A DNA stretch of 64,000 nucleotides, from IMG/VR virus record IMGVR_UViG_3300032516_000001, positions 124,001 through 188,000 of that record; one strand, given 5' to 3'. The translations under genes were made by a program, and so were the position numbers. Each line of letters begins with the position of its first letter. Position 1 is the first letter of the stretch. Positions 362 to 46,778 of the stretch are shown piece after piece. The notes under the pieces are model-generated. The model did no database searches and was not told the origin of the DNA. It saw nothing but the letters and a program-made list of their open reading frames with translations.

Positions 362-1156
362 TTACTCATACTTCAAGATTGATTTATTATCTTGAATTGA
401 TTTAGCACGACATGTGGTCCTAATGCGATGGCAGTTTGCACATACTAACTCACATTTCGCGATCTCTGCCATCAATTTTTCTCTCGATTGATGTACCATC
501 GAACCAACACTACGAACTTTAGGTACCATGACATGATCAAAGTCCATCTGGCATGGTTCAAAAAATTCAAGGCAATCTATACATGGATTACTTCGTTTCA
601 ATTTATCTAGAAATAAACGGTTTCTGATCTTGGTTTCATTGTTATTTTTACTCGGTTTATTTGTACGAAGTCTATGACAATTGGCACATATAACATCGCA
701 TTTCTGAATTTCATTTAATAACTTCAATAGTGATGAGTGATAAACCATACGATGTATGTCACATGTCTTAATTTTATGACCACGATGATGGAAATCGATT
801 GCACAAACTGGAAATATTTTTCCACAATCAACACACGGGACAGATTTTAATTTGCGTATTAAATTTATTCTTTCAGATTTTTGTTTTAAATGTGATCTTC
901 TTTGTACTTCACGAGTTCTATTGGTATTCTTCGTTTTAATCCAACGTTCATGTCGTCTGTCTTTATGATTTAACGAATATTTATTAGCTGCAGCTCGACT
1001 TGCTTCTGGTGACTTCCGACGTTTCGGTAATTTAATTGACTCGTAATATTGATGATCATACGCCTTAAAACAATTATCACATCGTCTATCTCTAAATTTT
1101 AGACGTTTAAAAACAACATCAGGTTCGGATAAACCACATTTAGTACAAACAGTCAT
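362..1156 (-). CDS. HNH homing-endonuclease-like protein with two tandem HNH modules
   Basis: CVDCG..IDFHH..KCDVICANCHRLRT and CIDC..MDFDH..KCELVCANCHRIRT; N-terminal CxxC..CxxC. Confidence 0.8.
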   Translation of the reverse strand: MTVCTKCGLSEPDVVFKRLKFRDRRCDNCFKAYDHQYYESIKLPKRRKSPEASRAAANKYSLNHKDRRHERWIKTKNTNRTREVQRRSHLKQKSERINLIRKLKSVPCVDCGKIFPVCAIDFHHRGHKIKTCDIHRMVYHSSLLKLLNEIQKCDVICANCHRLRTNKPSKNNNETKIRNRLFLDKLKRSNPCIDCLEFFEPCQMDFDHVMVPKVRSVGSMVHQSREKLMAEIAKCELVCANCHRIRTTCRAKSIQDNKSILKYE

Positions 1157-6135: not shown

Positions 6136-7089
6136 TTATCGATTAGGTTTACTGAATCTGGGATTCTTACTTTGATTGGCAGGATTCTTATTTATTTGAG
6201 GAGGGGATACAGGAGGCTGTCCGGATACTCTCTGATCTAATACTTCATTATTAACAGATGGCAATCCAACCAATGGTTTCTCGGGGGTACTTTGAGGTGC
6301 ATTGTGTTCCAGTATATTAGTTTGAGATGTTTTTCTCTGGGCTATGGCCTGCTCAATAGGACTCATTTTGCTCATATCTGGAACTGGTAGGGAGGTCACC
6401 GGCTCTGGGATAGTCGGTGGAACCTGGTTCTGGATATAGCCTTCCTGGCTTTCCTCGGGCTCAGAAAGGGTTTTAAATGGGTCGAAAGCTACAGAGGTAG
6501 CTTTTGGCTCAAGAGAGGCTTCCGAGCCCGAAGAAGCGGGCTCTTCGGTCTTGTCTCCAGATTCCATAAGCGGGCGTAAATGTAGTTGCTTTCGAAGGTC
6601 GGCCGCCTTCATTTCTAGTTCAACTAGCTCCTCATGGGGATCCTGAGCATTTTCAAATTTAATTTTTGCCTTATTTCCTTTATTGAATGACTCCATCAAG
6701 TCAGCAAAAATATCGAATGTAGTATCCATCCAATCAGTACTCCAATTTGCCATCTTATAATATACATATTTAGATAAATCTACCCTTATCATTTCTCCTG
6801 GTTTTCTGGGATCCGGAACAGTAAATATTTCTCCTTTATCCCGATAAGGTCTCAAATCTATTTCATCTATTCCAACTATCGCATGAGAAAGACTGACCCT
6901 TTTACTTTCCGCTATAAGGAAGGCTCCTGAGACCCCCTCAGTAGTTATTGTCTCAGTGACTTTAAGCTGGGCTGTGTATGAAATAGGGGATAACCATACG
7001 ATTCTCCCACCGACTTCTCTTTTCCAACACTCATCCCTACCAACGTTAGATATTTGTTCGTCTAATTGTGCTAGAAAATCGTTATCCAT
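6136..7089 (-). CDS. Hypothetical protein, probable tail assembly chaperone
   Basis: Between tube and tape measure genes; N-terminal folded region plus Pro/Ser-rich tail; assignment is positional. Confidence 0.5.
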   Translation of the reverse strand: MDNDFLAQLDEQISNVGRDECWKREVGGRIVWLSPISYTAQLKVTETITTEGVSGAFLIAESKRVSLSHAIVGIDEIDLRPYRDKGEIFTVPDPRKPGEMIRVDLSKYVYYKMANWSTDWMDTTFDIFADLMESFNKGNKAKIKFENAQDPHEELVELEMKAADLRKQLHLRPLMESGDKTEEPASSGSEASLEPKATSVAFDPFKTLSEPEESQEGYIQNQVPPTIPEPVTSLPVPDMSKMSPIEQAIAQRKTSQTNILEHNAPQSTPEKPLVGLPSVNNEVLDQRVSGQPPVSPPQINKNPANQSKNPRFSKPNR

Positions 7090-7124
7090 ATATGGATACA
7101 GTACCGAAGTTGTTCATTCCGAAG

Positions 7125-8924
7125 TTATGGACGCCATACCCATCGTTTCTTACCAAGATCCCATATTTTACTGAAACCCTGTTGTGTCCGTAATTCTTCT
7201 TCCGTAGTTAATGATTTTTTCTCGTTTCCTTTTTTCCGAAGGCCCGATTTGTGGTATCTTTTGTTTGCCTTTACCCAATAATAATCTGGAAGTACTTCCC
7301 CATCCAACTTAAATCCAAGTTTATTATATATCCTACCACTAAACAAACGATTATCAGAAAATGACACAATTGACGTTGGGTCATTTTGTTGTATGAAAAG
7401 ACCGAATATTTTCGACCATACACCATGAATTTTATACTCCGAATTAGAAACCATTCTGAGCAATTCCCAGGGATGAATAGATTGACGAGTTGGATACCCA
7501 AAGGAGATTGCGGCTATTATTTTATTATCTAGGAATACTCCATAATGGAGTTTAGCATTACAACTCCCTATGTAATGAAATTCATCATATAATGGTTTAA
7601 CTTCAGAATGTAAAACAGTCCGTATTTTGCATTCTGAAGGGCGGATAGATTGTGCTCCGGAAAGTGATAATCGATTTTTCAATAATTGTTCAACTTTTGT
7701 TCGTTTAAACGTCCATTCATCTTCAAACAAGGAAATGAAATCAAAACCAGCATTAATGGCGTTATTATATTTTTGTAAATCCCGTCGTTTTGCCCCGAGT
7801 CCACTATGCCAACGGAGTCCGTTATACTCAAGTAGAAAATTTTTACTAGGAATATAAATATCATATTTATACTTATCGATAGGGTGTTCCATTATAACTT
7901 CTAAACCGAGGCTTTCAAACCATGATGCTAAGTCCTGCTGAGCCATACTGATATGATTAGAAGCGCACCCGCAGGTAAGCGACGAACCTTTGACTATGTT
8001 ACCCCATATTGGATCATATCTTTCACCACAAGCGCCACATAAAGCTGGGAATGGCTCACAATATTTTTTTACATCTTCGAGTGGCTGAATCCATCCAGAC
8101 GGAATATCATTAACTGAAATCGGGGTCTTAAGGCTTCTTAGTAATTGTTCATTTTCTTTATACCATTTAACAGCTCTTGACTGACATAAACCACATCTGG
8201 TTGTTTTACCAGCGGTAACATCACATATAATGGACTCTAAAATCCCGCCACATTTACACTTCCATTTAACTTTCTTATTTGACCCGGGTGAGATGCTTTG
8301 CGGGTCAGACATTCTAAGTTGGCCAAATTCAGTATTGGTCCAGTATTCTAGGGATTTAACATTACATAATCCACAAGAAGAAGTGTGTCCTGATGTTACT
8401 AGCCAAATCGGTCTAACCGTTGTCTGTCCGCAATCACATTTCCATAACACTTCCGTATGAGAAGATGGATGAGATTCACATGGGTTGGCCATTTTAAGTT
8501 TGCCATATTTAGTAACCCGAAAATGTTCGGCAGATAATATTGAGCACTTTCCGCATGTTTTAGTGTGGCCCGAAGTAACAGAAGTAACTTGGATATCGAC
8601 TTCACGTCCACAATCACAAATCCAAGTGTGTTTTTTCTTGGATTTAGGCAATAAATCTTGTGGAAATTTTAGTCTTAAACTTCCGTATTTAATATTTTCC
8701 CAATAATCAGCGGTTAAAAGTCCGCATTTGCCGCAAGAAACAGTGCCGCCAGATACAACATCACAAACGGAAGCTATAACACTTCTGCCACAATCACAGA
8801 TCCATTCGACTTTGCGATGTGAACCCCGTGATGAGTCCGATGGACTCATCATCCGAAGTTTACCATATTTTATATTCTGAAAGTGATTGGCAGATAAAAA
8901 TGTAGTTGCAATTGTGTCCATCAC
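7125..8924 (-). CDS. Homing-endonuclease-like protein: Zn-ribbon repeats, PD-(D/E)XK nuclease, Hef-like GNAT-type C-terminus
   Basis: Repeated W.C.CG...SCG.C units; YDIYIP..LLEYNGLRWH nuclease motif; WELLRM..SFSDNR..GRIY.KLGF..KIWDLG. Start is GTG 8924 or ATG 8921. Confidence 0.75.
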   Translation of the reverse strand: MMDTIATTFLSANHFQNIKYGKLRMMSPSDSSRGSHRKVEWICDCGRSVIASVCDVVSGGTVSCGKCGLLTADYWENIKYGSLRLKFPQDLLPKSKKKHTWICDCGREVDIQVTSVTSGHTKTCGKCSILSAEHFRVTKYGKLKMANPCESHPSSHTEVLWKCDCGQTTVRPIWLVTSGHTSSCGLCNVKSLEYWTNTEFGQLRMSDPQSISPGSNKKVKWKCKCGGILESIICDVTAGKTTRCGLCQSRAVKWYKENEQLLRSLKTPISVNDIPSGWIQPLEDVKKYCEPFPALCGACGERYDPIWGNIVKGSSLTCGCASNHISMAQQDLASWFESLGLEVIMEHPIDKYKYDIYIPSKNFLLEYNGLRWHSGLGAKRRDLQKYNNAINAGFDFISLFEDEWTFKRTKVEQLLKNRLSLSGAQSIRPSECKIRTVLHSEVKPLYDEFHYIGSCNAKLHYGVFLDNKIIAAISFGYPTRQSIHPWELLRMVSNSEYKIHGVWSKIFGLFIQQNDPTSIVSFSDNRLFSGRIYNKLGFKLDGEVLPDYYWVKANKRYHKSGLRKKGNEKKSLTTEEELRTQQGFSKIWDLGKKRWVWRP

Positions 8925-8957
8925 TACATAATATCACAACGTAGTGATGGACACAAT
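8911..8957 (-). promoter_or_regulatory. Perfect 17-bp inverted repeat with a TG-A-TATTAT (-10) box in its loop and the endonuclease start codon in its 3' arm
   Basis: 8911-8927 ATTGTGTCCATCACTAC is the exact reverse complement of 8941-8957 GTAGTGATGGACACAAT; 13-nt loop. Confidence 0.8.
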
Positions 8958-8964
8958 ATTAAAA

Positions 8965-9654
8965 TCAGCCAAACACGCCTTGGAACAGGGTAGATCCCAT
9001 TCCTGGAAGAAGAATCGGATTATTACCAGCATCAAGTAAATCACCATAATTATCTGGTGACTCACCATACACCGTAGCCCCATCCGTTACATCGGTCACA
9101 GTTGCCGAAGCATCTTCTGCTACAATTGCTGAATCTGACGGGAAACTCGCGCTGATGCTGTTGAGCCAGCAAGCTTGATAAAATGTGATGAGTGCGAGAT
9201 TCCCAGAACCGTCACTAGCCGTTACTGGAGCTCCATAAATCTTAGTATCATTAGCATTCGTCACGAGTTCCGAAAACACTAATTCTGATTTGATATCAAA
9301 TGGCCATTTGTGTTGACGAAGACTTCTTACCAGACCATCAACACCACCACGATAACCAACTTCCTGAGCAATACCAGCGGTGTAGAGCAAAGTGCGGTTC
9401 AGGGTCAGCGTCATCGGCTCAGTGACACTGGGCACGAGTTCCTGAATCTTATCCCCGAAACCAACACCACGCACCGGATCGATTGTACGAGCTTCATTCC
9501 AGTCAAAAGTCGAAAGAACACCTATCTGTCTCTCAACTACTGGATCAGCACCCGGGTAGGGCTTGGAAATAACCCGGTTCTTCTGCGAAATCGCTACGCG
9601 CGTATTTGGTGAAGAACCACGCTGGTAGATGTAATTGTTTGCTGGAGCTGCCAT
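8965..9654 (-). CDS. Tail tube protein
   Basis: QIGVLSTFDWNE.RTIDPVRGVGFGD.IQELVP..TLTLNR..LY pattern resembles myovirus tube proteins; ATG at 9654 preferred over TTG 9675. Confidence 0.7.
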   Translation of the reverse strand: MAAPANNYIYQRGSSPNTRVAISQKNRVISKPYPGADPVVERQIGVLSTFDWNEARTIDPVRGVGFGDKIQELVPSVTEPMTLTLNRTLLYTAGIAQEVGYRGGVDGLVRSLRQHKWPFDIKSELVFSELVTNANDTKIYGAPVTASDGSGNLALITFYQACWLNSISASFPSDSAIVAEDASATVTDVTDGATVYGESPDNYGDLLDAGNNPILLPGMGSTLFQGVFG

Positions 9655-9740
9655 ATTTTCATAAGACACAAACATTCAAAAATTAATTTATATGTAAATC
9701 AATAATATAATAAACTGATTATTTGAGTGTAATTTATCTT

Positions 9741-11345
9741 ATGCCAATTAGAACCAAGGAGGATAAAGAACAAAGAAAAATAATGGAAGCAAACAAAACT
9801 GAAGAGTATAGAATCTTTTATGGTAATAATCAAAACTTAATACAAGAATGCAAATTATGTCACGACAAAAAACCTCTAAATGAATTCGTTTCTAATTATT
9901 CATTCAGATTCAGATGTAAAAAATGTCACCGTACGAAAACATATAGATGGAGAAATGAGAATAAACCAGCCTTCATAGAAATCAGACAACGTAGAGGAAA
10001 AAGATCTGCAGCATTCATCAGATCATTAAAAGAAGGAAAATCTTGTTGTCAATGTGAAAAACCATTTCCTCCGCATGTTTTGGATTTCCATCATTTATTC
10101 GATAAAGAATGGACAATTTCTCAGCTATATGGGAAAAGTCATGATAGAATACTGAAAGAAATAGGAAAATGTCAATTATTATGTGCTAATTGTCATAGAG
10201 ATACGACTCAAAACGAAATTTCTAAGATACCTATTCTAAAAAACAGATATTATGCCTCTGCATTAACTGATACCGAGATTAATATAGGAGATGCAACCAA
10301 GTTATGTATAAAATGTAACAAAACTAAACATATTAATGACTTTACTTTATTAAAGATAGGTAAACGTTTCACATATTGTAGAATGTGCATGAGAGAATAT
10401 AATACTACCCTATCTAAAAACAGAAAAAACAGAGCAGCAAAAGAAACTGTTAGAAATGAAAAAGATATGGCAGTATGCGTAGATTGTGGTAATAAATTTC
10501 ATTATTGGATATTTGACACTGATCATATAGGAGAAGACAAAATTGGAAATATAAATATTCTACAAAACGGATCGATACATGAAGTCAAAGATGAATTGAA
10601 TAAATGCGACATAATTTGTGTTAATTGTCATAGAAAACGAACTTGGCAATGGAGGAAAAATTCAGAACCATGTATATGCGGGTTTAAACCAAGAAGTGCA
10701 TCAGAAAAATCAAAACACATTAAAGATTGTCCGCTCCAAGAAAAACCAATCATAAACGAGTCAGAAGTTGATACCTTCATACAAAAAATAGAATCATTCA
10801 GAACAAATAACTTAGAAGAATCTCATGCAATACTCGATAAATATCATTATGCTAAATTTGGTAGATCAGCCTACGTTGTATATAAAGCATTATATGATAA
10901 TGAAATAGTAGCTATCGTGAAATTCGCTACCCCAGTGAGAAAAGAAGTTGCCACGTCTTTAGGGTGGAATTACTCAGAAGTATTGGAGTTAGATAGATTT
11001 TGTATCCTGCCTAAATTTCAAGTAAAAAATTTAGCGTCTAAAGTTATGGCACAAGTGATAAAGTTAGTAAAATCAGATTTTCCGCATATAGTGTTATTAG
11101 TATCATTTGTCGATCCAGAACAGGGGCATATCGGGACTATATATAAAGCATCCAATTGGACATATATTGGAACTACGGCCAATTCCTATACGTATATAGA
11201 TGAAAAAGGCGACGAAATTAATAAAAAAACCATTTACAACAGAGCAATAAGTAATAACATGAAGGAGAAAGAATATGCAGAGAAAATGAATTTGTCGAAA
11301 GTAAAAATAGGAGTAAAGGATAAATATGGGTACGAACTTAATTGA
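9741..11345 (+). CDS. Double-HNH endonuclease fused to a C-terminal Mom-like (GNAT) domain
   Basis: LDFHH..CANCHR and DTDH..CVNCHRKRT modules, then LDKYHY..KFATPVR..EVLELDRFCI..LVSFVDP.QGH.GTIYKASNW. ATG 9741 follows TAATTT by 5 nt. Confidence 0.75.
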   Translation: MPIRTKEDKEQRKIMEANKTEEYRIFYGNNQNLIQECKLCHDKKPLNEFVSNYSFRFRCKKCHRTKTYRWRNENKPAFIEIRQRRGKRSAAFIRSLKEGKSCCQCEKPFPPHVLDFHHLFDKEWTISQLYGKSHDRILKEIGKCQLLCANCHRDTTQNEISKIPILKNRYYASALTDTEINIGDATKLCIKCNKTKHINDFTLLKIGKRFTYCRMCMREYNTTLSKNRKNRAAKETVRNEKDMAVCVDCGNKFHYWIFDTDHIGEDKIGNINILQNGSIHEVKDELNKCDIICVNCHRKRTWQWRKNSEPCICGFKPRSASEKSKHIKDCPLQEKPIINESEVDTFIQKIESFRTNNLEESHAILDKYHYAKFGRSAYVVYKALYDNEIVAIVKFATPVRKEVATSLGWNYSEVLELDRFCILPKFQVKNLASKVMAQVIKLVKSDFPHIVLLVSFVDPEQGHIGTIYKASNWTYIGTTANSYTYIDEKGDEINKKTIYNRAISNNMKEKEYAEKMNLSKVKIGVKDKYGYELN

Positions 11346-11646
11346 AGTCACGAATAACTATGCCGAACTTCGTAAAAGACAAATATTACGACGACGGTTC
11401 GAAACACGAGAATTCATTATAAGTCTTAAACAACAACCATGTACTGATTGTGGCGGTACATTCCATTACTGTCAAATGGATTTTGTTGCTAAAAATGGCA
11501 ATGAACCATTCAAAATAAGCAATTTTCTCAATAGGTCGAGAAAACGTATAATACTAGAAATTAATAAACGTGATTTGGTTTGCGCGAATTGCGGCAGGCT
11601 TCGAACCTGGAATACGCAACGAGCTAAAAGATCGGGGCCTACTTAA
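11326..11646 (+). CDS. Small single-module HNH protein
   Basis: CTDCG..QMDF..DLVCANCGRLRT; the His positions are degenerate. Confidence 0.6.
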   Translation: MGTNLIEVTNNYAELRKRQILRRRFETREFIISLKQQPCTDCGGTFHYCQMDFVAKNGNEPFKISNFLNRSRKRIILEINKRDLVCANCGRLRTWNTQRAKRSGPT

Positions 11647-11956
11647 TGATTCTAGCTGCTATGCGACGAAGAGTGGAAGCCGTCTTTTCTTCGGTTCCAG
11701 TTTCTTTTTCAAATTTAGTCTTGGACTCTGAAACTTCTTCTTCCGATTCAGTAGCCTTTTGGGCCCACTGTGATCCATCAGGCATTTCAAAAACCGCAGA
11801 TTTGTAACCTTGAATAGTCAAATATCCTGAAAACTCAGATTCCCTAACCACCTTCTCCGGGATTTCTTTTATTCCCCAATTCCCGTCCGGTTGTAAATAA
11901 AATCCGGTGCCTTTAGATAAACTTGGATCCGCAGCATAAGCACCAGCGTTTCTCAT
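11639..11956 (-). CDS. Hypothetical protein ending in LRRIAARII
   Basis: 105-aa ORF co-oriented with the structural operon. Confidence 0.6.
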   Translation of the reverse strand: MRNAGAYAADPSLSKGTGFYLQPDGNWGIKEIPEKVVRESEFSGYLTIQGYKSAVFEMPDGSQWAQKATESEEEVSESKTKFEKETGTEEKTASTLRRIAARIIK

Positions 11957-12024
11957 ATTAAATACCTTTTTCCCCTGGCCACAGATGAAGTAGCCAGGGG
12001 AAATATTGATTCATCAGTATCTGT

Positions 12025-12597
12025 TTATGGTCCAGGACCAGTGGGTCCAGTAGCGCCCGCAGGACCAGTTGCTCCAGTAGCGCCCTCAGGACCAGTGGGT
12101 CCAGTAGCTCCAGTAGCGCCCTCAGGACCAGTGGGTCCAGTTGCTCCAGTAGCGCCCTCAGGACCAGTGGGTCCAGTAGCTCCGGTGACGCCCGCAGCTC
12201 CCTCAGGACCAGTGGGTCCAGTAGCTCCGGTGACGCCCGCAGCTCCCTCAGGACCAGTGGGTCCAGTGACGCCTTGAACACCAGTGGCGCCTTGAACACC
12301 AGTGGCGCCTTGAACACCAGTGGCGCCCTGTGGCCCTGTGGCACCCATCGCTATTACTGTTAGCGCACCAGTATTATATTCAGGATCTCCAGTCCATTTA
12401 TAGATGAGCCCAGTTGTTAACCGCTGAGCTTCAAGACTTGTGAATTGCGCCCCAGTACAAACAGTTAGCTCGCTAGTTATGTCGAAAGCCGGACCACGAG
12501 CCGGCGGAGCGGAACTCTTCGGAATTGTTCGGGCAGGGTGACCGGCAGCCATTGTTATGGCACTACCAACGGTGTTGTACACATAAAGTGGTGGCAT
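12025..12597 (-). CDS. Collagen-like (Gly-X-Y) repeat virion protein
   Basis: C-terminal run of GAT/GVQ/GPT/GPE triplets; tandem DNA repeats at about 12040-12335. Confidence 0.8.
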
Positions 12598-12621
12598 TGT
12601 AGTTCTCCCTATCCCTACCTA

Positions 12622-13047
12622 TTAGGTCAAGGCTCCCATGGCATTGTGCCAAGCTACCCCATCTGAATAATTGTAGGCATTATCATCTGTATTCCAGATT
12701 CCAGCGCCTACGGGATAGAGATTTGCATTTGGCCGAGACACATCGTCGTATTCCTCTGGCTTTAGGTACATCAGGGCTGTTATCAGCCCTGCAGCCACGA
12801 GTCTACGGATGGCACCGTTCTCATATGAAATCAGAGATTTCGAGGAAGCGGTGACATCAATATATCCGGCAGTCAATGGAGGAGCAGGAGGTGATGGTAG
12901 GTACCTCGGGACGTACACCGGCACTTTCCGATATTGGTATTCATAACCAACATCAAGATCCGGTACTAATACCGGACCGGTGTTTACACGACCGTCCTGG
13001 AGGAGCCCAGTGTGTGTGAGCCGAATGTAAAGACGCGGTGTTGCCAC
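12622..13047 (-). CDS. Hypothetical, probable virion protein
   Basis: 141-aa ORF in the structural operon; IWNTDDNAYNYSDG.W motif resembles fibre/baseplate termini. Confidence 0.55.
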   Translation of the reverse strand: MATPRLYIRLTHTGLLQDGRVNTGPVLVPDLDVGYEYQYRKVPVYVPRYLPSPPAPPLTAGYIDVTASSKSLISYENGAIRRLVAAGLITALMYLKPEEYDDVSRPNANLYPVGAGIWNTDDNAYNYSDGVAWHNAMGALT

Positions 13048-17238: not shown

Positions 17239-17709
17239 ATGAACACCAAAAAATGTATCAAATGTGGAAAAACAAAAAGTATAGAAGAATTTGGTCATTT
17301 TAAAGTAAAAAAGAAATATGACTATGTAAGAAAGATATGTACACGGTGCATGTCAAATGCCAGAATTGTATATAATAAAAACCATCGATTTAAACAAACA
17401 TATCAAAATTGTGTTAAATTCAATAAGTTATTTGGAATAAAATGTGATTTCAGTCCGGAATTCGTAGAAAACATAATTAACCAGCCCTGTGCATATTGTG
17501 ATGATAATGAAGTGAAGATTGGACTGGATCGAATTGATAATGATAAACCATACTCAAAACATAACATTGTTCCATGCTGTATTAGATGTAATTATATAAA
17601 AAGGGATATGCCAACCCGAGCATGGAATATGTTGCATCCTGAAATCAAGAAAATAAGAGAACAAGGATTGTTCGGTAGTTGGTGTCCAAGAGGGTTGAAA
17701 TTAACATGA
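17239..17709 (+). CDS. HNH endonuclease-like protein
   Basis: CAYC..IGLDRIDN.K.Y...NIVPCCIRCN.IK; TGG-TAAAGT lies 5 nt before ATG. Confidence 0.75.
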   Translation: MNTKKCIKCGKTKSIEEFGHFKVKKKYDYVRKICTRCMSNARIVYNKNHRFKQTYQNCVKFNKLFGIKCDFSPEFVENIINQPCAYCDDNEVKIGLDRIDNDKPYSKHNIVPCCIRCNYIKRDMPTRAWNMLHPEIKKIREQGLFGSWCPRGLKLT

Positions 17710-18200
17710 GAATTTGTAGAATTTGTAAAGAAGAAAAATTATTAAATGAATTTTATTCACAAATTATGAAGTTGGCCAGTGGGCCGAAAAGAATGTATAG
17801 AACAGAATGCAAAAAATGCACTGATAAAACCTCAAGGAAATATCATCAAAATCATAGGGACAGAATGATATTGGATAATTCGAGAAGGGAAGACAAGAGG
17901 AATAATTTAAAAACAGAAATTACCAGAGAACAAATTTGTGAATTAATAAATAAACCATGTCATTACTGTGGAGAAACGTGCATTCCGATCGGAATCGATA
18001 GAGTCGACAATAATAAGGGCCACACCAATAATAATATTGTTTCATGTTGTATTAGATGCAATTCACTTAAAAGTGATATGCCAACACAAGCATGGATGAA
18101 GTTAGTACCCACTGTTCGAAGAATTCGAGAACTGGGATTCTTCGAACAGTGGGTTGGTCACAATCTGGGATCTAGAAAATTAGGTATCAGACATCGCTAA
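17706..18200 (+). CDS. HNH endonuclease-like protein, tandem paralog of 17239-17709
   Basis: CHYCG..IGIDRVDNNKGH..NIVSCCIRCN.LK; ATGA overlap with the preceding stop. Confidence 0.75.
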   Translation: MRICRICKEEKLLNEFYSQIMKLASGPKRMYRTECKKCTDKTSRKYHQNHRDRMILDNSRREDKRNNLKTEITREQICELINKPCHYCGETCIPIGIDRVDNNKGHTNNNIVSCCIRCNSLKSDMPTQAWMKLVPTVRRIRELGFFEQWVGHNLGSRKLGIRHR

Positions 18201-39243: not shown

Positions 39244-40818
39244 CTAAAATCGATAAATATATTTGATCTTAGCCGGAATTGCAATCTTGGTCAAACCAAG
39301 CTTATCAACGTACTCACGTTCTTTTAATTTCAAATTACAAGCCTTATCATAAACAGATTTTTTGTTTATTTCATTTCCATCTTTATCAACGTAAACATAA
39401 CTAGAAGTAGTTTGACCAACTTCTTCCCAATTACTTGCTTTATATATGGTACCAACATGTCCAAATCGTGGATCGGCAAACGAAACAAGACATTTAATTT
39501 CGGGAAAAGCGCTAGACACCTTCTTAATAACTCTAGACATGAGATAAGAAGCAAAATTCTTCTTATGATAACTGGGATCAATACAGAATCTGTCTAATTC
39601 CAAGACTTCGCCATGATTTAAATCAAGTGTATGCGCTATACCTTGTCTAACAGGAGTAGCGAATTTAATAACAGCAACAACTAGTTCTTGAATTTTGGCA
39701 ACAAATATAACTTTAGATGCTCGGCCAAATCCAGCATAATGATACTTATCCAAAAATTCGGTAACATCTGGAGAATGGAGTACTTGGGAAATAACTATAG
39801 AATCAAAAGAAAAATCGATAACATCAATATTTGATCTGTTATGATAACAAACCCCATTTCCAATATACTTACTATAATTACAATTCCAGCACAAAAGCTG
39901 ATATTTTGACATTAACGATGGCTTTTTAACTAATTTTTTGTAAAGATCGATTCCAGATCCTTCACCTATCTTTCTACATGCTGAACCATCATTGTATTTA
40001 TGATCCAAAGTTAACTTATAAAGATCCTTCTCTCCACAACATACGCATTTTCCACCCAATAATGTTAAACAACTCTGTCTGAATTTATCAGTTATTATTC
40101 TACGGCAAGGCAGACATCTATTACTGCCATGAGACAACTGTGATGGGAATTCGTTAACGTCTTTTTCTTTTAAACAAATATTACAAATTTTGGTTATACC
40201 TGATGAAATAACTACTTTTAACTGATGTATTGGGTTAATTCTATATTTCTTATTATTACAATTGTGGCACAATACCTGATAACGTGTTTTATCTGACTCA
40301 CCGTTTAAAATCCTACGTTTCCAACCAAGACTGCCAAAACTACGTTCAGTATTACCATCGTTATTTACATGATCTATTGTCAGAAACTCTTTAATATCTA
40401 AACCGCATGTAACGCATTTTTGACCCAATAAATCAAGAACTTGATTAATAATTGACTGTCTGTACACTCTATGACTTTCAACTACATGTTCAGCGTTATC
40501 ATCAGTCCATTTTTTTATTCTTACCCTAATCTTATCAAGATTTTTCAATCTGTATTCTGATTTATTCTTTAGTATTGCTGCACGATTTTCTTTATAATAT
40601 TCATGTTTATCATTCAAAATTTGATCATGATTATCAGCATACCATTTCTTCCTGATAACTTTTAACTTTTCACTATTTTCTATTTCATATATTTTATTAT
40701 GTTTCTTTCTACATTCCTTACACTTTGAGTCTTTCCCGTTTTTCTTAATTGTGTTATTAAAATACTCAGAAAGCAATTTTTCAACACCACATTTAACACA
40801 AATTTGTGTTGCATCCAT
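39244..40818 (-). CDS. Double-HNH endonuclease fused to a C-terminal Mom-like (GNAT) domain
   Basis: C..CG..LTIDHVNNDG..CHNCN and C.CCG..LTLDH.YNDG..CWNCN; then LDKYHY..KFATPVR..EVLELDRFCI..SFADP..GH.GTIYKASNW. Confidence 0.78.
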   Translation of the reverse strand: MDATQICVKCGVEKLLSEYFNNTIKKNGKDSKCKECRKKHNKIYEIENSEKLKVIRKKWYADNHDQILNDKHEYYKENRAAILKNKSEYRLKNLDKIRVRIKKWTDDNAEHVVESHRVYRQSIINQVLDLLGQKCVTCGLDIKEFLTIDHVNNDGNTERSFGSLGWKRRILNGESDKTRYQVLCHNCNNKKYRINPIHQLKVVISSGITKICNICLKEKDVNEFPSQLSHGSNRCLPCRRIITDKFRQSCLTLLGGKCVCCGEKDLYKLTLDHKYNDGSACRKIGEGSGIDLYKKLVKKPSLMSKYQLLCWNCNYSKYIGNGVCYHNRSNIDVIDFSFDSIVISQVLHSPDVTEFLDKYHYAGFGRASKVIFVAKIQELVVAVIKFATPVRQGIAHTLDLNHGEVLELDRFCIDPSYHKKNFASYLMSRVIKKVSSAFPEIKCLVSFADPRFGHVGTIYKASNWEEVGQTTSSYVYVDKDGNEINKKSVYDKACNLKLKEREYVDKLGLTKIAIPAKIKYIYRF

Positions 40819-46136: not shown

Positions 46137-46778
46137 ATGCTGAATGGATTTACTTGGTGGAAATACGTTATGAAACCGGTCTTGATTAATGAAAAAGTAT
46201 TTGAAGGACTGGATCCATTGAGTTATACAATGGAACCAAAATTCGACGGCTATCGAATCCCTACTATTGCAGGATCTGATCGAGTTTTCACTTTTACCCG
46301 ACAGAAGAACCCGTTGAAACTCCCCGCGACTCTCCAAGATGAACTCAATAGCCTTAATCTACCGGCCGGCACAGTCCTTGATGGAGAAATCTGGAGTCCA
46401 GCTAAACGAGGAGGATGGGATAATCTTCCACAAGGACAATGTAAATTATCCTTTTGGGACGTAATCCGGGAAGGGACTAAAGACGTTTCAAGTGAGTCAA
46501 TCGAAACCCGTCGTCAAATTCTTACTAATTTACTGTCTAATTCTACCCCGAATATCATGCAAGCGACTGTGTATGCTGTGTCATTTGAAAATTTGCGAAT
46601 GCTCGAGCAACAGGCACGAGAAGTTAGAGATGGCCAGGCACTACGTTCCGGCTTCATTCATGGTGTTGTGTTGAAGCGAAACGGGTCACCACGACGAGAT
46701 CATGCATGTAGATCTGTCGAACATCCTGATTGGCTTAAAATTGTGTACCGTGATCTCTCCGGATGGGCGCCAAGATAA
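46137..46778 (+). CDS. ATP-dependent ligase-like nucleotidyltransferase domain with no OB domain
   Basis: Motif I EPKFDGYR, III VLDGEI, IIIa SFWDVI, IV HGVVLK, V WLKI; only 213 aa. Confidence 0.8.
   Translation: MLNGFTWWKYVMKPVLINEKVFEGLDPLSYTMEPKFDGYRIPTIAGSDRVFTFTRQKNPLKLPATLQDELNSLNLPAGTVLDGEIWSPAKRGGWDNLPQGQCKLSFWDVIREGTKDVSSESIETRRQILTNLLSNSTPNIMQATVYAVSFENLRMLEQQAREVRDGQALRSGFIHGVVLKRNGSPRRDHACRSVEHPDWLKIVYRDLSGWAPR

What the first reader, a model, noticed from the sequence alone, without database searches (positions are those of the whole stretch)
9741..11345. HNH nuclease fused to a Mom-like DNA-modifying domain (copy 1)
Seen: two HNH modules followed by a domain with HY..KF.TP..ELDRFC..SF.DP..GH.GTIYKASNW. 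Established: this pattern resembles the phage Mu Mom family, GNAT-fold enzymes that modify adenine and block restriction. Inference: a single-polypeptide cut-and-protect selfish element, or a sequence-targeted DNA modifier that uses the Zn/HNH modules as DNA readers. It sits antisense inside the tail operon, as mobile endonuclease genes often do.
Basis: partly seen in the sequence, partly recalled or inferred. Interest (0 to 1): 0.7.

Follow-up and report, generated by a model that had tools for sequence, protein, structure and literature searches.

The report
Mobile HNH nuclease fused to Mom
A giant phage from sediment carries a mobile gene that joins two DNA-cutting HNH modules to a domain of the Mom family, which chemically marks adenine in DNA; nuclease-Mom fusions have been described in giant phages before, so this is a new variant (tandem HNH instead of a restriction-type nuclease), and nobody has tested what the marking domain does.

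Summary
ORF 9741..11345 (+), 534 aa, has two complete zinc-ribbon + HNH nuclease modules and a C-terminal Mom-family GNAT domain. The Mom assignment rests on Pfam PF25680 (83.7 bits, cut-off 27.1) and on an AlphaFold model whose best PDB match is Mu Mom, 8bv8 (Z 18.4; next GNAT 14.1).

Six of seven functional Mom residues are kept. The essential R151 is Glu here.

The gene behaves as a mobile endonuclease gene:
- It lies antisense next to a tail-tube-like gene, at 31% GC in a 42% GC genome.
- Relatives have this site empty, holding only a small HNH-like gene, or holding other endonuclease genes.
- Orthologues sit at the same site in three separate clades.
- This partial 242-kb jumbo-phage record has five nuclease-Mom genes. 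A complete 393-kb relative has none.

The kind is known. Iyer et al. 2021 described jumbo-phage Mom domains fused to restriction-fold nucleases and proposed cut-and-protect. The neighbouring copy, 7125..8924, belongs to the Hef-like homing endonucleases, whose C-terminal domain I show is Mom-related.

New here are the tandem-HNH architecture and the comparative evidence of mobility. Cut-and-protect remains an inference.

The parts
9741..11345 (+). Whole gene: 534-aa tandem HNH nuclease fused to a Mom-family GNAT domain ('copy A')
   Evidence: ORF. The start was chosen by alignment with homologues. Pfam and PHROG matches. AF2 model with mean pLDDT 88. GC is 31.2% against 42.3% for the genome.
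9849..9926 (+). Zinc ribbon 1 (CxxC...CxxC, residues 37-62)
   Evidence: The cysteines are conserved in 21-24 of 27 homologues.
10032..10220 (+). HNH module 1 (residues 98-160; H117/H118, N150, H152; CxxC...CxxC)
   Evidence: PHROG HNH matches. Catalytic and zinc residues are conserved in 20-26 of 27 homologues.
10305..10388 (+). Zinc ribbon 2 (residues 189-216)
   Evidence: C189, C192, C213 and C216 are invariant in 27 homologues.
10464..10655 (+). HNH module 2 (residues 242-305; D261-H262, N295, H297)
   Evidence: D261, H262, C246, C249, C293 and C296 are invariant in 27 homologues.
10767..11342 (+). Mom-family GNAT domain (residues 343-534): H369, Y370, R419, S433, D458, Y468 kept; E460 in place of Mu R151; two short helices between the last strands
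   Evidence: PF25680 at 83.7 bits. phmmer to 8bv8, E 1e-5. Foldseek to 8bv8, E 1.4e-10. VIA-align Z 18.4 over model 343-534. Residue mapping.
9676..9740 (.). 65-bp AT-rich divergent intergenic region between the tail-tube-like gene and copy A
   Evidence: Sequence. Promoter-like sites are no more frequent than in shuffles.
8965..9675 (-). Conserved tail-tube-like gene next to the insertion site (likely target neighbourhood)
   Evidence: 65-78% identical in 22 related loci. Structure and feature neighbours are tail-tube families.
11326..11646 (+). Small (106 aa) HNH-like gene without the catalytic histidines. Its start overlaps the end of copy A by 20 nt. It is a resident gene of this site in relatives.
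   Evidence: phrog_3106, E 4.7e-17. Alignment with four relatives' versions shows all of them lack both His. A Shine-Dalgarno-like AAGGA lies inside the end of copy A.
7125..8924 (-). Sister gene 'copy E' on the other side of the tail-tube gene: DUF4379 zinc fingers + Vsr-like nuclease + divergent Mom-like domain (Hef-like homing endonuclease type)
   Evidence: Pfam and PHROG matches, phrog_559 E 2.3e-68 and phrog_3339 E 1.8e-58. 392 phage records, many annotated as homing or Hef-like endonuclease. All seven Mom residues are kept.
39244..40818 (-).
   Evidence: PF25680, E 6.8e-21. phrog_1384 and phrog_2255. GC 31.4%.

Best explanation
The gene is a free-standing, mobile endonuclease gene of a jumbo phage.

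Shown:
- It encodes two complete zinc-ribbon + HNH nuclease modules and a C-terminal Mom-family GNAT domain whose Mom-type active site is selectively conserved.
- It occupies a site next to the tail-tube gene that is empty or differently occupied in related phages.

Inferred mechanism:
- The two HNH sites, one per strand, cut DNA at or near this site in genomes that lack the gene. Repair then copies the gene in, which is homing.
- The Mom domain binds double-stranded DNA, flips an adenine and acylates its N6. By analogy with Mu Mom the donor is most likely an aminoacyl-tRNA.
- That mark protects the carrier's own, already modified copies of the recognition sequence from the fused nuclease.

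The element would then be a single-chain restriction-modification-like selfish element whose self-immunity is epigenetic rather than genetic.
For: Domain identity:
- Pfam and PHROG matches.
- AF2 model, pLDDT 88.
- Best PDB match is Mu Mom 8bv8: Foldseek E 1.4e-10; VIA Z 18.4 against 14.1 or less for other GNATs.

Nuclease competence:
- Catalytic and zinc residues of both HNH modules are conserved in 27 homologues.

Mom active site:
- H58, Y59, R111, S124, D149 and Y159 (Mu numbering, PMC13219725 and PMC7261163) are at least 90% conserved in 60 fused domains.
- Only 26 of 176 core columns reach that level. Hypergeometric P is 3.8e-5.
- The set includes the Mom-specific R111 and the co-substrate-pocket residues H58 and S124.
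- The helical insertion between the last strands, essential in Mu Mom, is present in shorter form.

The Mom domain is an add-on, not the only DNA binder:
- HNHx2-only homologues exist, one of them at this very site in L017.
- Zinc ribbons or HTH modules lie at the N-termini of family members.

Mobility:
- GC is 31% against 42% for the genome.
- In 17 related loci the site is empty, holds only the small HNH-like gene, holds HNHx2 alone, or holds a copy-E-like gene.
- Orthologues at 42-59% identity sit at the same site in three separate clades of the tail-tube tree, needing at least 3 gains or losses.
- Copy number among relatives runs 0, 0, 0, 0 and 6, against 5 here.
- Two contigs 99.3% identical over 4.6 kb differ by an 1,846-bp copy-E-like gene. 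Identity falls to 90% beyond it.

Published support:
- Iyer et al. 2021 made the same functional prediction for REase-Mom fusions.
Against: - No biochemical datum exists for any fused Mom domain.
- R151 is essential in Mu Mom (R151A is inactive). It is Glu in this protein and variable in its subfamily: T, A, R, D or E.
- The dimer residue W48 is not conserved. A dimer prediction gave no answer.
- Cultured-phage Hef-like proteins have Y59 changed to L or I, and some have D149 changed to N. At least part of the wider family may therefore use the domain non-catalytically.
- The 57%-complete genome record holds no tRNA-Gly.
- No gene-less allele was seen in the metagenome contigs laid on the locus.
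- A modifier acting in trans would also protect a co-infecting target genome, so immunity would depend on timing.
Confidence: 0.5

Rival explanations
1. This is a classical homing endonuclease in which the Mom-like domain is only a DNA-binding, adenine-flipping recognition module with no transfer chemistry. Self-immunity is genetic, through target-site differences, as in the T4 Seg and Mob enzymes.
For: - R151 is lost. W48 is not conserved.
- Cultured Hef-like proteins have eroded Y59 and, in some, D149.
- Homing endonucleases are modular and routinely borrow DNA-binding domains (PMC3239194).
- The domain is always C-terminal to a swappable nuclease: 91 Vsr-like against 53 HNHx2.
Against: - Residues of the co-substrate pocket (H58, S124) are among the few columns at least 90% conserved. 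S124 is the catalytic-dead position in Mu Mom.
- The copy-E subfamily keeps all seven residues in 99-117 of 118 sequences.
- HNHx2-only proteins occupy the same site without the domain.
- Separate zinc-ribbon or HTH modules are available for DNA recognition.
Confidence: 0.25
2. This is a phage-beneficial restriction-momylation system rather than a selfish homing element. The Mom domain modifies the phage genome broadly against host restriction. The nuclease degrades host or superinfecting-phage DNA. This is the reading of Iyer et al. 2021.
For: - A published prediction exists for jumbo-phage REase-Mom fusions, with five copies in phage PA5oct.
- This genome also has five copies.
- Mu Mom is a broad anti-restriction modifier.
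Against: - A complete 393-kb relative and three other large relatives have no Mom-domain gene at all.
- The genes are low-GC inserts at polymorphic sites beside conserved structural genes. Hef-like homing endonuclease genes of cultured phages sit the same way.
- Hef-type relatives are named as a homing-endonuclease type in the literature.
Confidence: 0.17
3. The GNAT domain acts on something other than DNA, for example by acylating a protein or an aminoacyl-tRNA as toxin GNATs do. The fusion to a nuclease would then be for another purpose.
For: The GNAT fold is very versatile. There is a weak PF00583 match at 22.3 bits.
Against: - Mu Mom is by far the closest structure and family.
- The Mom-specific Arg (R111), thought to handle the DNA base, is conserved in 64 of 66 sequences.
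- The domain is fused to DNA nucleases and DNA-binding modules in nearly all of the 154 full-length relatives examined.
Confidence: 0.05

Closest known systems
Phage Mu Mom (PDB 8bv8; Gly-tRNA(Gly)-dependent adenine N6 modifier; Silva et al. 2026, PMC13219725)
   Same: - Same Pfam family, and the same GNAT fold as the best structural match.
- H58, Y59, R111, S124, D149 and Y159 are kept.
- A helical insertion lies between the last two strands.
   Different: - Mu Mom is a stand-alone 241-aa dimer. This domain is the C-terminal third of a 534-aa nuclease.
- R151 is Glu here and the dimer residue W48 is absent.
- The insertion is about 20 aa instead of about 35.
- Identity is only 17-21%.
Jumbo-phage Mom domains fused to restriction-fold endoDNases (Iyer, Anantharaman, Krishnan, Burroughs, Aravind 2021, PMC7824862)
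   Same: - A Mom domain and a DNA nuclease in one polypeptide of a jumbo phage.
- Several copies per genome: five in PA5oct and five here.
- The predicted logic is to modify self and cut non-self.
   Different: - The nuclease here is a tandem HNH (beta-beta-alpha-metal) pair, not a PD-(D/E)xK/REase fold.
- The passage I read does not mention HNH fusions, mobility or site polymorphism.
Hef and Hef-like free-standing homing endonucleases (Vsr-like 'EDxHD' family; Sandegren et al. 2005; Taylor et al. 2011, PMC3239194)
   Same: - Free-standing, often antisense, between conserved structural genes.
- The C-terminal domain is homologous to the Mom family (HHalign 99.3%, E 1.4e-20).
- The neighbouring copy E is of this type.
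   Different: - Copy A has HNH modules instead of the Vsr-like nuclease.
- Its Mom domain is much closer to Mom: 84 bits, against 0-24 bits for Hef-like proteins.
Free-standing HNH homing endonucleases of T-even and related phages (for example MobE, I-HmuI)
   Same: - HNH catalytic motif.
- Free-standing gene beside a conserved essential gene.
- Patchy distribution among relatives.
   Different: - Those have one HNH module plus helix-turn-helix or NUMOD DNA-binding parts, and no modifying domain.
- I-HmuI nicks one strand only (from my own knowledge).
Single-chain restriction-modification enzymes (Type IIG/IIC), as a functional analogue only
   Same: Nuclease and DNA-modifying domain in one polypeptide. 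Self/non-self is decided by an epigenetic mark.
   Different: Those use SAM-dependent methylation and PD-(D/E)xK nucleases, and they are cellular defence genes. No homology is claimed. This comparison rests on my own knowledge, not on a test here.

Membership tests
Mom family (PF25680), GNAT-fold DNA adenine N6 modifiers | Profile match above the curated cut-off | tested here: met
   83.7 bits against a cut-off of 27.1, E 1.8e-23. 87.3 bits in the genome scan.
Mom family (PF25680), GNAT-fold DNA adenine N6 modifiers | GNAT fold with Mu Mom as nearest solved structure | tested here: met
   AF2 pLDDT 88. Foldseek to 8bv8, E 1.4e-10, TM 0.63. VIA Z 18.4 against 14.1 for the next GNAT.
Mom family (PF25680), GNAT-fold DNA adenine N6 modifiers | Functional residues H58, Y59, R111, S124, D149, Y159 | tested here: met
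   They are H369, Y370, R419, S433, D458 and Y468. All are at least 90% conserved in 60 fused domains.
Mom family (PF25680), GNAT-fold DNA adenine N6 modifiers | Essential R151 | tested here: not met
   It is Glu460 here. In 66 fused domains the position is T 26, A 13, R 10, D 5, E 4. The copy-E subfamily keeps R in 117 of 118.
Mom family (PF25680), GNAT-fold DNA adenine N6 modifiers | Helix-turn-helix-like insertion between strands 6 and 7 (essential in Mu Mom) | tested here: inconclusive
   Two short helices (495-504 and 509-515) sit between the last strands, and the VIA alignment runs to the C-terminus. The insertion is shorter and not alignable in sequence. The W181 position is a gap.
Mom family (PF25680), GNAT-fold DNA adenine N6 modifiers | Homodimer through W48 | tested here: inconclusive
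   W48 is not conserved. The dimer prediction returned 'no answer'.
Mom family (PF25680), GNAT-fold DNA adenine N6 modifiers | Aminoacyl-tRNA-dependent modification of adenine in dsDNA | not testable with these tools
   This needs expression plus nucleoside LC-MS/MS or in vitro reconstitution.
HNH (beta-beta-alpha-metal) endonucleases | H-N-H catalytic residues and zinc-binding CxxC pairs | tested here: met
   Both modules are intact and conserved in 27 homologues.
Free-standing homing endonuclease genes | Presence/absence polymorphism at a fixed site beside a conserved gene in related genomes | tested here: met
   Site states in 22 related loci. At least 3 gains or losses on the tail-tube tree. 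Relatives carry 0 or 6 copies.
Free-standing homing endonuclease genes | Composition unlike the host genome | tested here: met
   31.2% GC against 42.3%. The four close copies are among the 11 lowest-GC ORFs of 216.
Free-standing homing endonuclease genes | Site-specific cleavage of the gene-less allele and gene conversion | not testable with these tools
   There is no cultured host. The contigs laid on the locus showed no gene-less joint.
Hef-like (Vsr-like EDxHD) homing endonucleases | Vsr-like PD-(D/E)xK nuclease domain | tested here: not met
   Copy A has no Vsr or MTES_1575 match and falls in the HNHx2 class of my HMM census. Copy E and genome copies B and C do have it.
Hef-like (Vsr-like EDxHD) homing endonucleases | Shared C-terminal domain | tested here: met
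   Profile-profile comparison of Hef-like C-termini against Mom/type-1 domains: 99.3%, E 1.4e-20, 169 columns.
Jumbo-phage nuclease-Mom fusions (Iyer et al. 2021) | Mom domain and endoDNase in one polypeptide, multiple per jumbo-phage genome | tested here: met
   There are five in this 242-kb partial record. The nuclease fold differs: HNH here, REase fold in the paper.
Jumbo-phage nuclease-Mom fusions (Iyer et al. 2021) | Phage DNA is momylated and unmodified DNA is restricted | not testable with these tools
   This is a prediction only, both in the paper and here.

The most novel reading that the evidence does not exclude
Nuclease-Mom fusions, including the long-known Hef-like homing endonucleases, are a large class of homing endonucleases with epigenetic self-immunity. 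The fused Mom domain writes an aminoacyl-tRNA-derived mark on an adenine of the enzyme's own recognition site. The element can then target a sequence that stays intact in its carrier genome, which classical homing endonucleases cannot do. This would tie tRNA-dependent DNA hypermodification to the spread of selfish genes.
Probability: 0.3. Interest if true: 0.75.

Novelty: new variant of a known kind. Interest (0 to 1): 0.45.

Why it matters
Mom was shown only in 2026 to modify DNA with an amino acid taken from a charged tRNA.

This domain, with its active site conserved, is welded to site-specific nucleases in a very large uncharacterised family:
- 2,356 clusters at 50% identity match at E 1e-3 or better.
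- Nearly all of the best 150 matches are 400-700 aa, with Mom at the C-terminus.

Relatives in cultured phages are annotated simply as homing or Hef-like endonucleases.

If the fused domain is active, these proteins would be natural, sequence-targeted writers of a bulky adenine mark coupled to a nuclease. That bears on three things:
- how selfish genes avoid cutting their own genome;
- phage-phage exclusion;
- programmable DNA modification as a possible tool.

If it is inactive, it is a case of an enzyme fold recycled as a DNA reader. Either answer is reachable with one expression experiment.

Tried and rejected
- Megablast of the locus against GenBank phages found no match.
- tblastn of the whole protein against the same collection found no cultured phage with HNH and Mom parts in one place. 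Best coverage was 44%.
- Promoter and terminator scans gave nothing above shuffles.
- Rfam gave no hit on 6500-13000, so there is no intron context.
- The dimer prediction for the Mom domain returned 'no answer'. It is not used as evidence.
- Laying contigs from four other sediment metagenomes confirmed the sequence and its junctions. No joint skipping the gene appeared, and depth was very low.
- HHalign of Hef-like C-termini against the single Mu Mom sequence was weak: 8.8%, E 0.004. The link became clear only profile against profile.
- Pfam recognised few of the nuclease domains in relatives, so I classified them with HMMs built here.
- Sandegren et al. 2005 (Hef) and Iyer et al. 2009 were not held. 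What I say about Hef experiments rests on citing papers.
- The cluster look-up gave no accession or useful name.

Rejected ideas:
- HNH modules as inactive DNA readers.
- The small downstream HNH-like ORF as a decayed remnant of an insertion. It is a conserved resident gene in relatives.
- The two ORFs at 17239..18200 as one split gene. Both match the same part of the endonuclease VII profile.
Full report
**What is there**

The window is bases 124001-188000 of a 241,648-bp IMG/VR virus record judged 57% complete. A related record with terminal repeats is 393 kb, so this is a jumbo phage. It occurs in sediment metagenomes.

Nearly all genes in the window are on the minus strand. The ORF of the finding is on the plus strand. 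The ORF listing starts it at a TTG at 9723. The stop is TGA at 11343-11345, and the protein has 534 residues.

**Domains**

PHROGs finds two HNH stretches: phrog_2255 at E 9e-46 and phrog_3106 at E 5.5e-33. Pfam finds the Mom family, PF25680, at E 1.8e-23 and 83.7 bits against a cut-off of 27.1.

The layout is [zinc ribbon + HNH] twice, then the Mom domain, with coordinates. In an alignment of 27 homologues, the zinc cysteines and the His-Asn-His residues of both HNH modules are conserved. D261, H262 and six cysteines are invariant. Both modules therefore look like working nucleases, not readers.

An AlphaFold2 model has mean pLDDT 88. Its best PDB match is the crystal structure of Mu Mom, 8bv8:
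- Foldseek gives E 1.4e-10 and TM 0.63.
- VIA-align gives Z 18.4 over model residues 343-534 against chain residues 20-222. Other GNATs reach at most 14.1.

**Is the Mom active site kept?**

Two papers define the functional residues of Mu Mom (PMC7261163; PMC13219725). They are H58, Y59, R111, S124, D149, R151 and Y159, plus W48 for dimerisation and a helix-turn-helix-like insertion at 175-209.

The second paper shows that Mom transfers glycine from Gly-tRNA(Gly) to N6 of adenine in double-stranded DNA.

By direct alignment to 8bv8 and a family alignment, this protein keeps H369, Y370, R419, S433, D458 and Y468. It has Glu460 where Mu has R151.

In 60 fused domains of this subfamily, only 26 of 176 core columns are at least 90% conserved. 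Six of the seven functional positions are among them (hypergeometric P 3.8e-5). W48 is not conserved. The insertion is present as two short helices but is shorter.

**The family**

This genome has five Mom-domain ORFs, and all are fused to nucleases:
- two with HNH modules: this one and 39244..40818;
- two with a zinc ribbon, repeats and a Vsr-like nuclease, both outside the window;
- one at 7125..8924, with DUF4379 zinc fingers, a Vsr-like nuclease and a divergent Mom-like domain.

A search of 1.8 billion cluster representatives with the Mom domain alone found 2,356 clusters at E 1e-3 or better, and 106 at E 1e-30 or better. Nearly all of the best 150 are 400-700 aa with the domain at the very C-terminus.

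Of 154 full-length relatives, 91 carry a Vsr-like nuclease, 53 carry two HNH modules, and 2 carry one. N-terminal parts include many HTH types, and one sequence has a LAGLIDADG-like domain. On a tree of the Mom domains the nuclease type changes at least 6 times, against 46 for shuffled labels (weakly supported FastTree).

HNHx2 proteins without any Mom domain also exist (P0025-27; window 362..1156).

**Link to known homing endonucleases**

The copy at 7125..8924 matches 392 GenBank phage records. Many are annotated 'homing endonuclease' or 'putative Hef-like homing endonuclease', and one is annotated 'putative nuclease/acetyltransferase protein'.

In Campylobacter phage CP30A, Acinetobacter phages 133 and DLP1, and Salmonella phage Jersey, these genes lie antisense between conserved structural genes:
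- neck and tail-sheath-stabiliser genes in CP30A;
- gp23 and gp24 in the two Acinetobacter phages;
- terminase and portal in Jersey.

Pfam sees Mom only weakly or not at all in those proteins. A profile of their C-termini nevertheless matches a Mom/type-1 profile at 99.3% probability and E 1.4e-20.

Hef-type enzymes were placed in the Vsr-like 'EDxHD' homing endonuclease family (PMC3239194). Hef of phage U5 is cited as cutting nrdB (PMC2988022).

In 118 metagenomic relatives of copy E all seven Mom residues are kept. The four cultured examples have Y59 changed to L or I, and two have D149 changed to N.

**Mobility at this locus**

The gene next door, 8965..9675, is tail-tube-like. It is 65-78% identical in 22 related loci.

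Upstream of it, relatives have one of the following:
- nothing (L014-16, L021-22);
- only a small HNH-like gene (L008-13, L018-19);
- an HNHx2 gene without Mom, 44% identical to residues 3-308 (L017);
- a copy-E-like gene (L007, L020).

Orthologues of the whole HNHx2-Mom gene, 42-59% identical, sit at exactly this site in L028, L029/30, L031/32 and the P0003 contigs. They are usually followed by the small gene.

On the tail-tube tree these occupy three separate clades, each next to gene-less relatives. At least 3 gains or losses are needed.

The gene has 31.2% GC in a 42.3% GC genome. Among five large relatives, four have no Mom-domain gene, including a complete 393-kb genome, and one has six.

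L029 and L030 are 99.3% identical over 4.6 kb, including their HNHx2-Mom gene. L029 has an 1,846-bp copy-E-like gene where L030 has 79 bp, and identity drops to 90.0% beyond it. That pattern is reported for nuclease genes at recombination boundaries (PMC10448857).

**Prior art**

Iyer et al. 2021 (PMC7824862) state three things:
- Momylation is predicted to protect phage DNA while the nuclease attacks host or superinfecting-phage DNA.
- PA5oct has five such enzymes.

The kind and the cut-and-protect idea are therefore published. My literature searches found no paper that describes HNH-Mom fusions or links the Hef-like C-terminus to Mom. The library is incomplete, and two key papers were not held.

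**Interpretation**

Firm conclusions:
- The gene encodes a tandem-HNH nuclease fused to a Mom-family domain.
- It is an accessory, mobile gene at a hot spot beside the tail-tube gene.

Probable: the Mom domain is still an enzyme, because its co-substrate pocket and the Mom-specific arginine are selectively conserved.

Inferred only: it marks adenine in the nuclease's own recognition site, so that already modified carrier genomes are immune while naive genomes are cut.

The main rival is a non-catalytic DNA-reader role. The loss of R151 and the erosion of residues in cultured Hef-like proteins support it.

The published 'phage-beneficial restriction-modification' reading fits less well. These genes are absent from close relatives, and they sit in the genome like homing endonuclease genes.

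Noticed in passing
window 11326..11646 (+): A 106-aa HNH-like gene that keeps the zinc cysteines but lacks both catalytic histidines (D-F-V in place of D-x-H; C-A-N-C-G in place of C-x-N-C-H). The same His-less gene sits divergently next to the tail-tube gene in at least four relatives, so it is a conserved, probably non-catalytic resident gene. Its function is unknown. A site-binding or regulatory role is conceivable.
   Followed up: partly
L029:1353-3198 versus L030:2344-2422: Two contigs 99.3% identical over 4.6 kb differ by a 1.85-kb Vsr-like + Mom-like endonuclease gene between the tail-tube gene and the next gene. Identity drops to 90% on the far side. This is a clean presence/absence allele at a recombination boundary.
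   Followed up: yes
L007:6687-7225: Downstream of the tail-tube gene, a copy-E-like gene appears as a remnant. Matches to residues 5-133 are followed directly by residues 544-597, an internal deletion that suggests a decaying endonuclease gene.
   Followed up: no
window 362..1156 (-), 17239..17709 (+), 17679..18200 (+): More low-GC HNH endonuclease genes: one HNHx2 gene without a Mom domain, and two adjacent endonuclease VII-like genes on the minority strand. The genome is heavily loaded with endonuclease genes.
   Followed up: partly
window 12025..12597 (-): A collagen-like (Gly-X-Y) repeat protein of tail-fibre type, with 54% GC. Metagenome contigs show repeat-length joints here ('goes back 50') and many related repeats pile up. 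The repeat number is probably polymorphic.
   Followed up: no
genome G000:C1:15604-15679 (outside the window): The only tRNA ARAGORN finds in the 242-kb record has anticodon TTA, so it is suppressor-like and would read UAA. No tRNA-Gly was found. I did not check whether any genes depend on read-through.
   Followed up: no
window 46137..46778 (+): A 213-aa ORF on the minority strand matches only the adenylation part of ATP-dependent DNA ligases or capping enzymes. It is possibly truncated, or a small nucleotidyltransferase.
   Followed up: no
related records G001-G005: Mom-domain nuclease genes come all-or-many: 0, 0, 0, 0 and 6 copies in five related jumbo-phage records, against 5 here. Some G005 matches contain in-frame stops, which could mean decaying copies.
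   Followed up: partly
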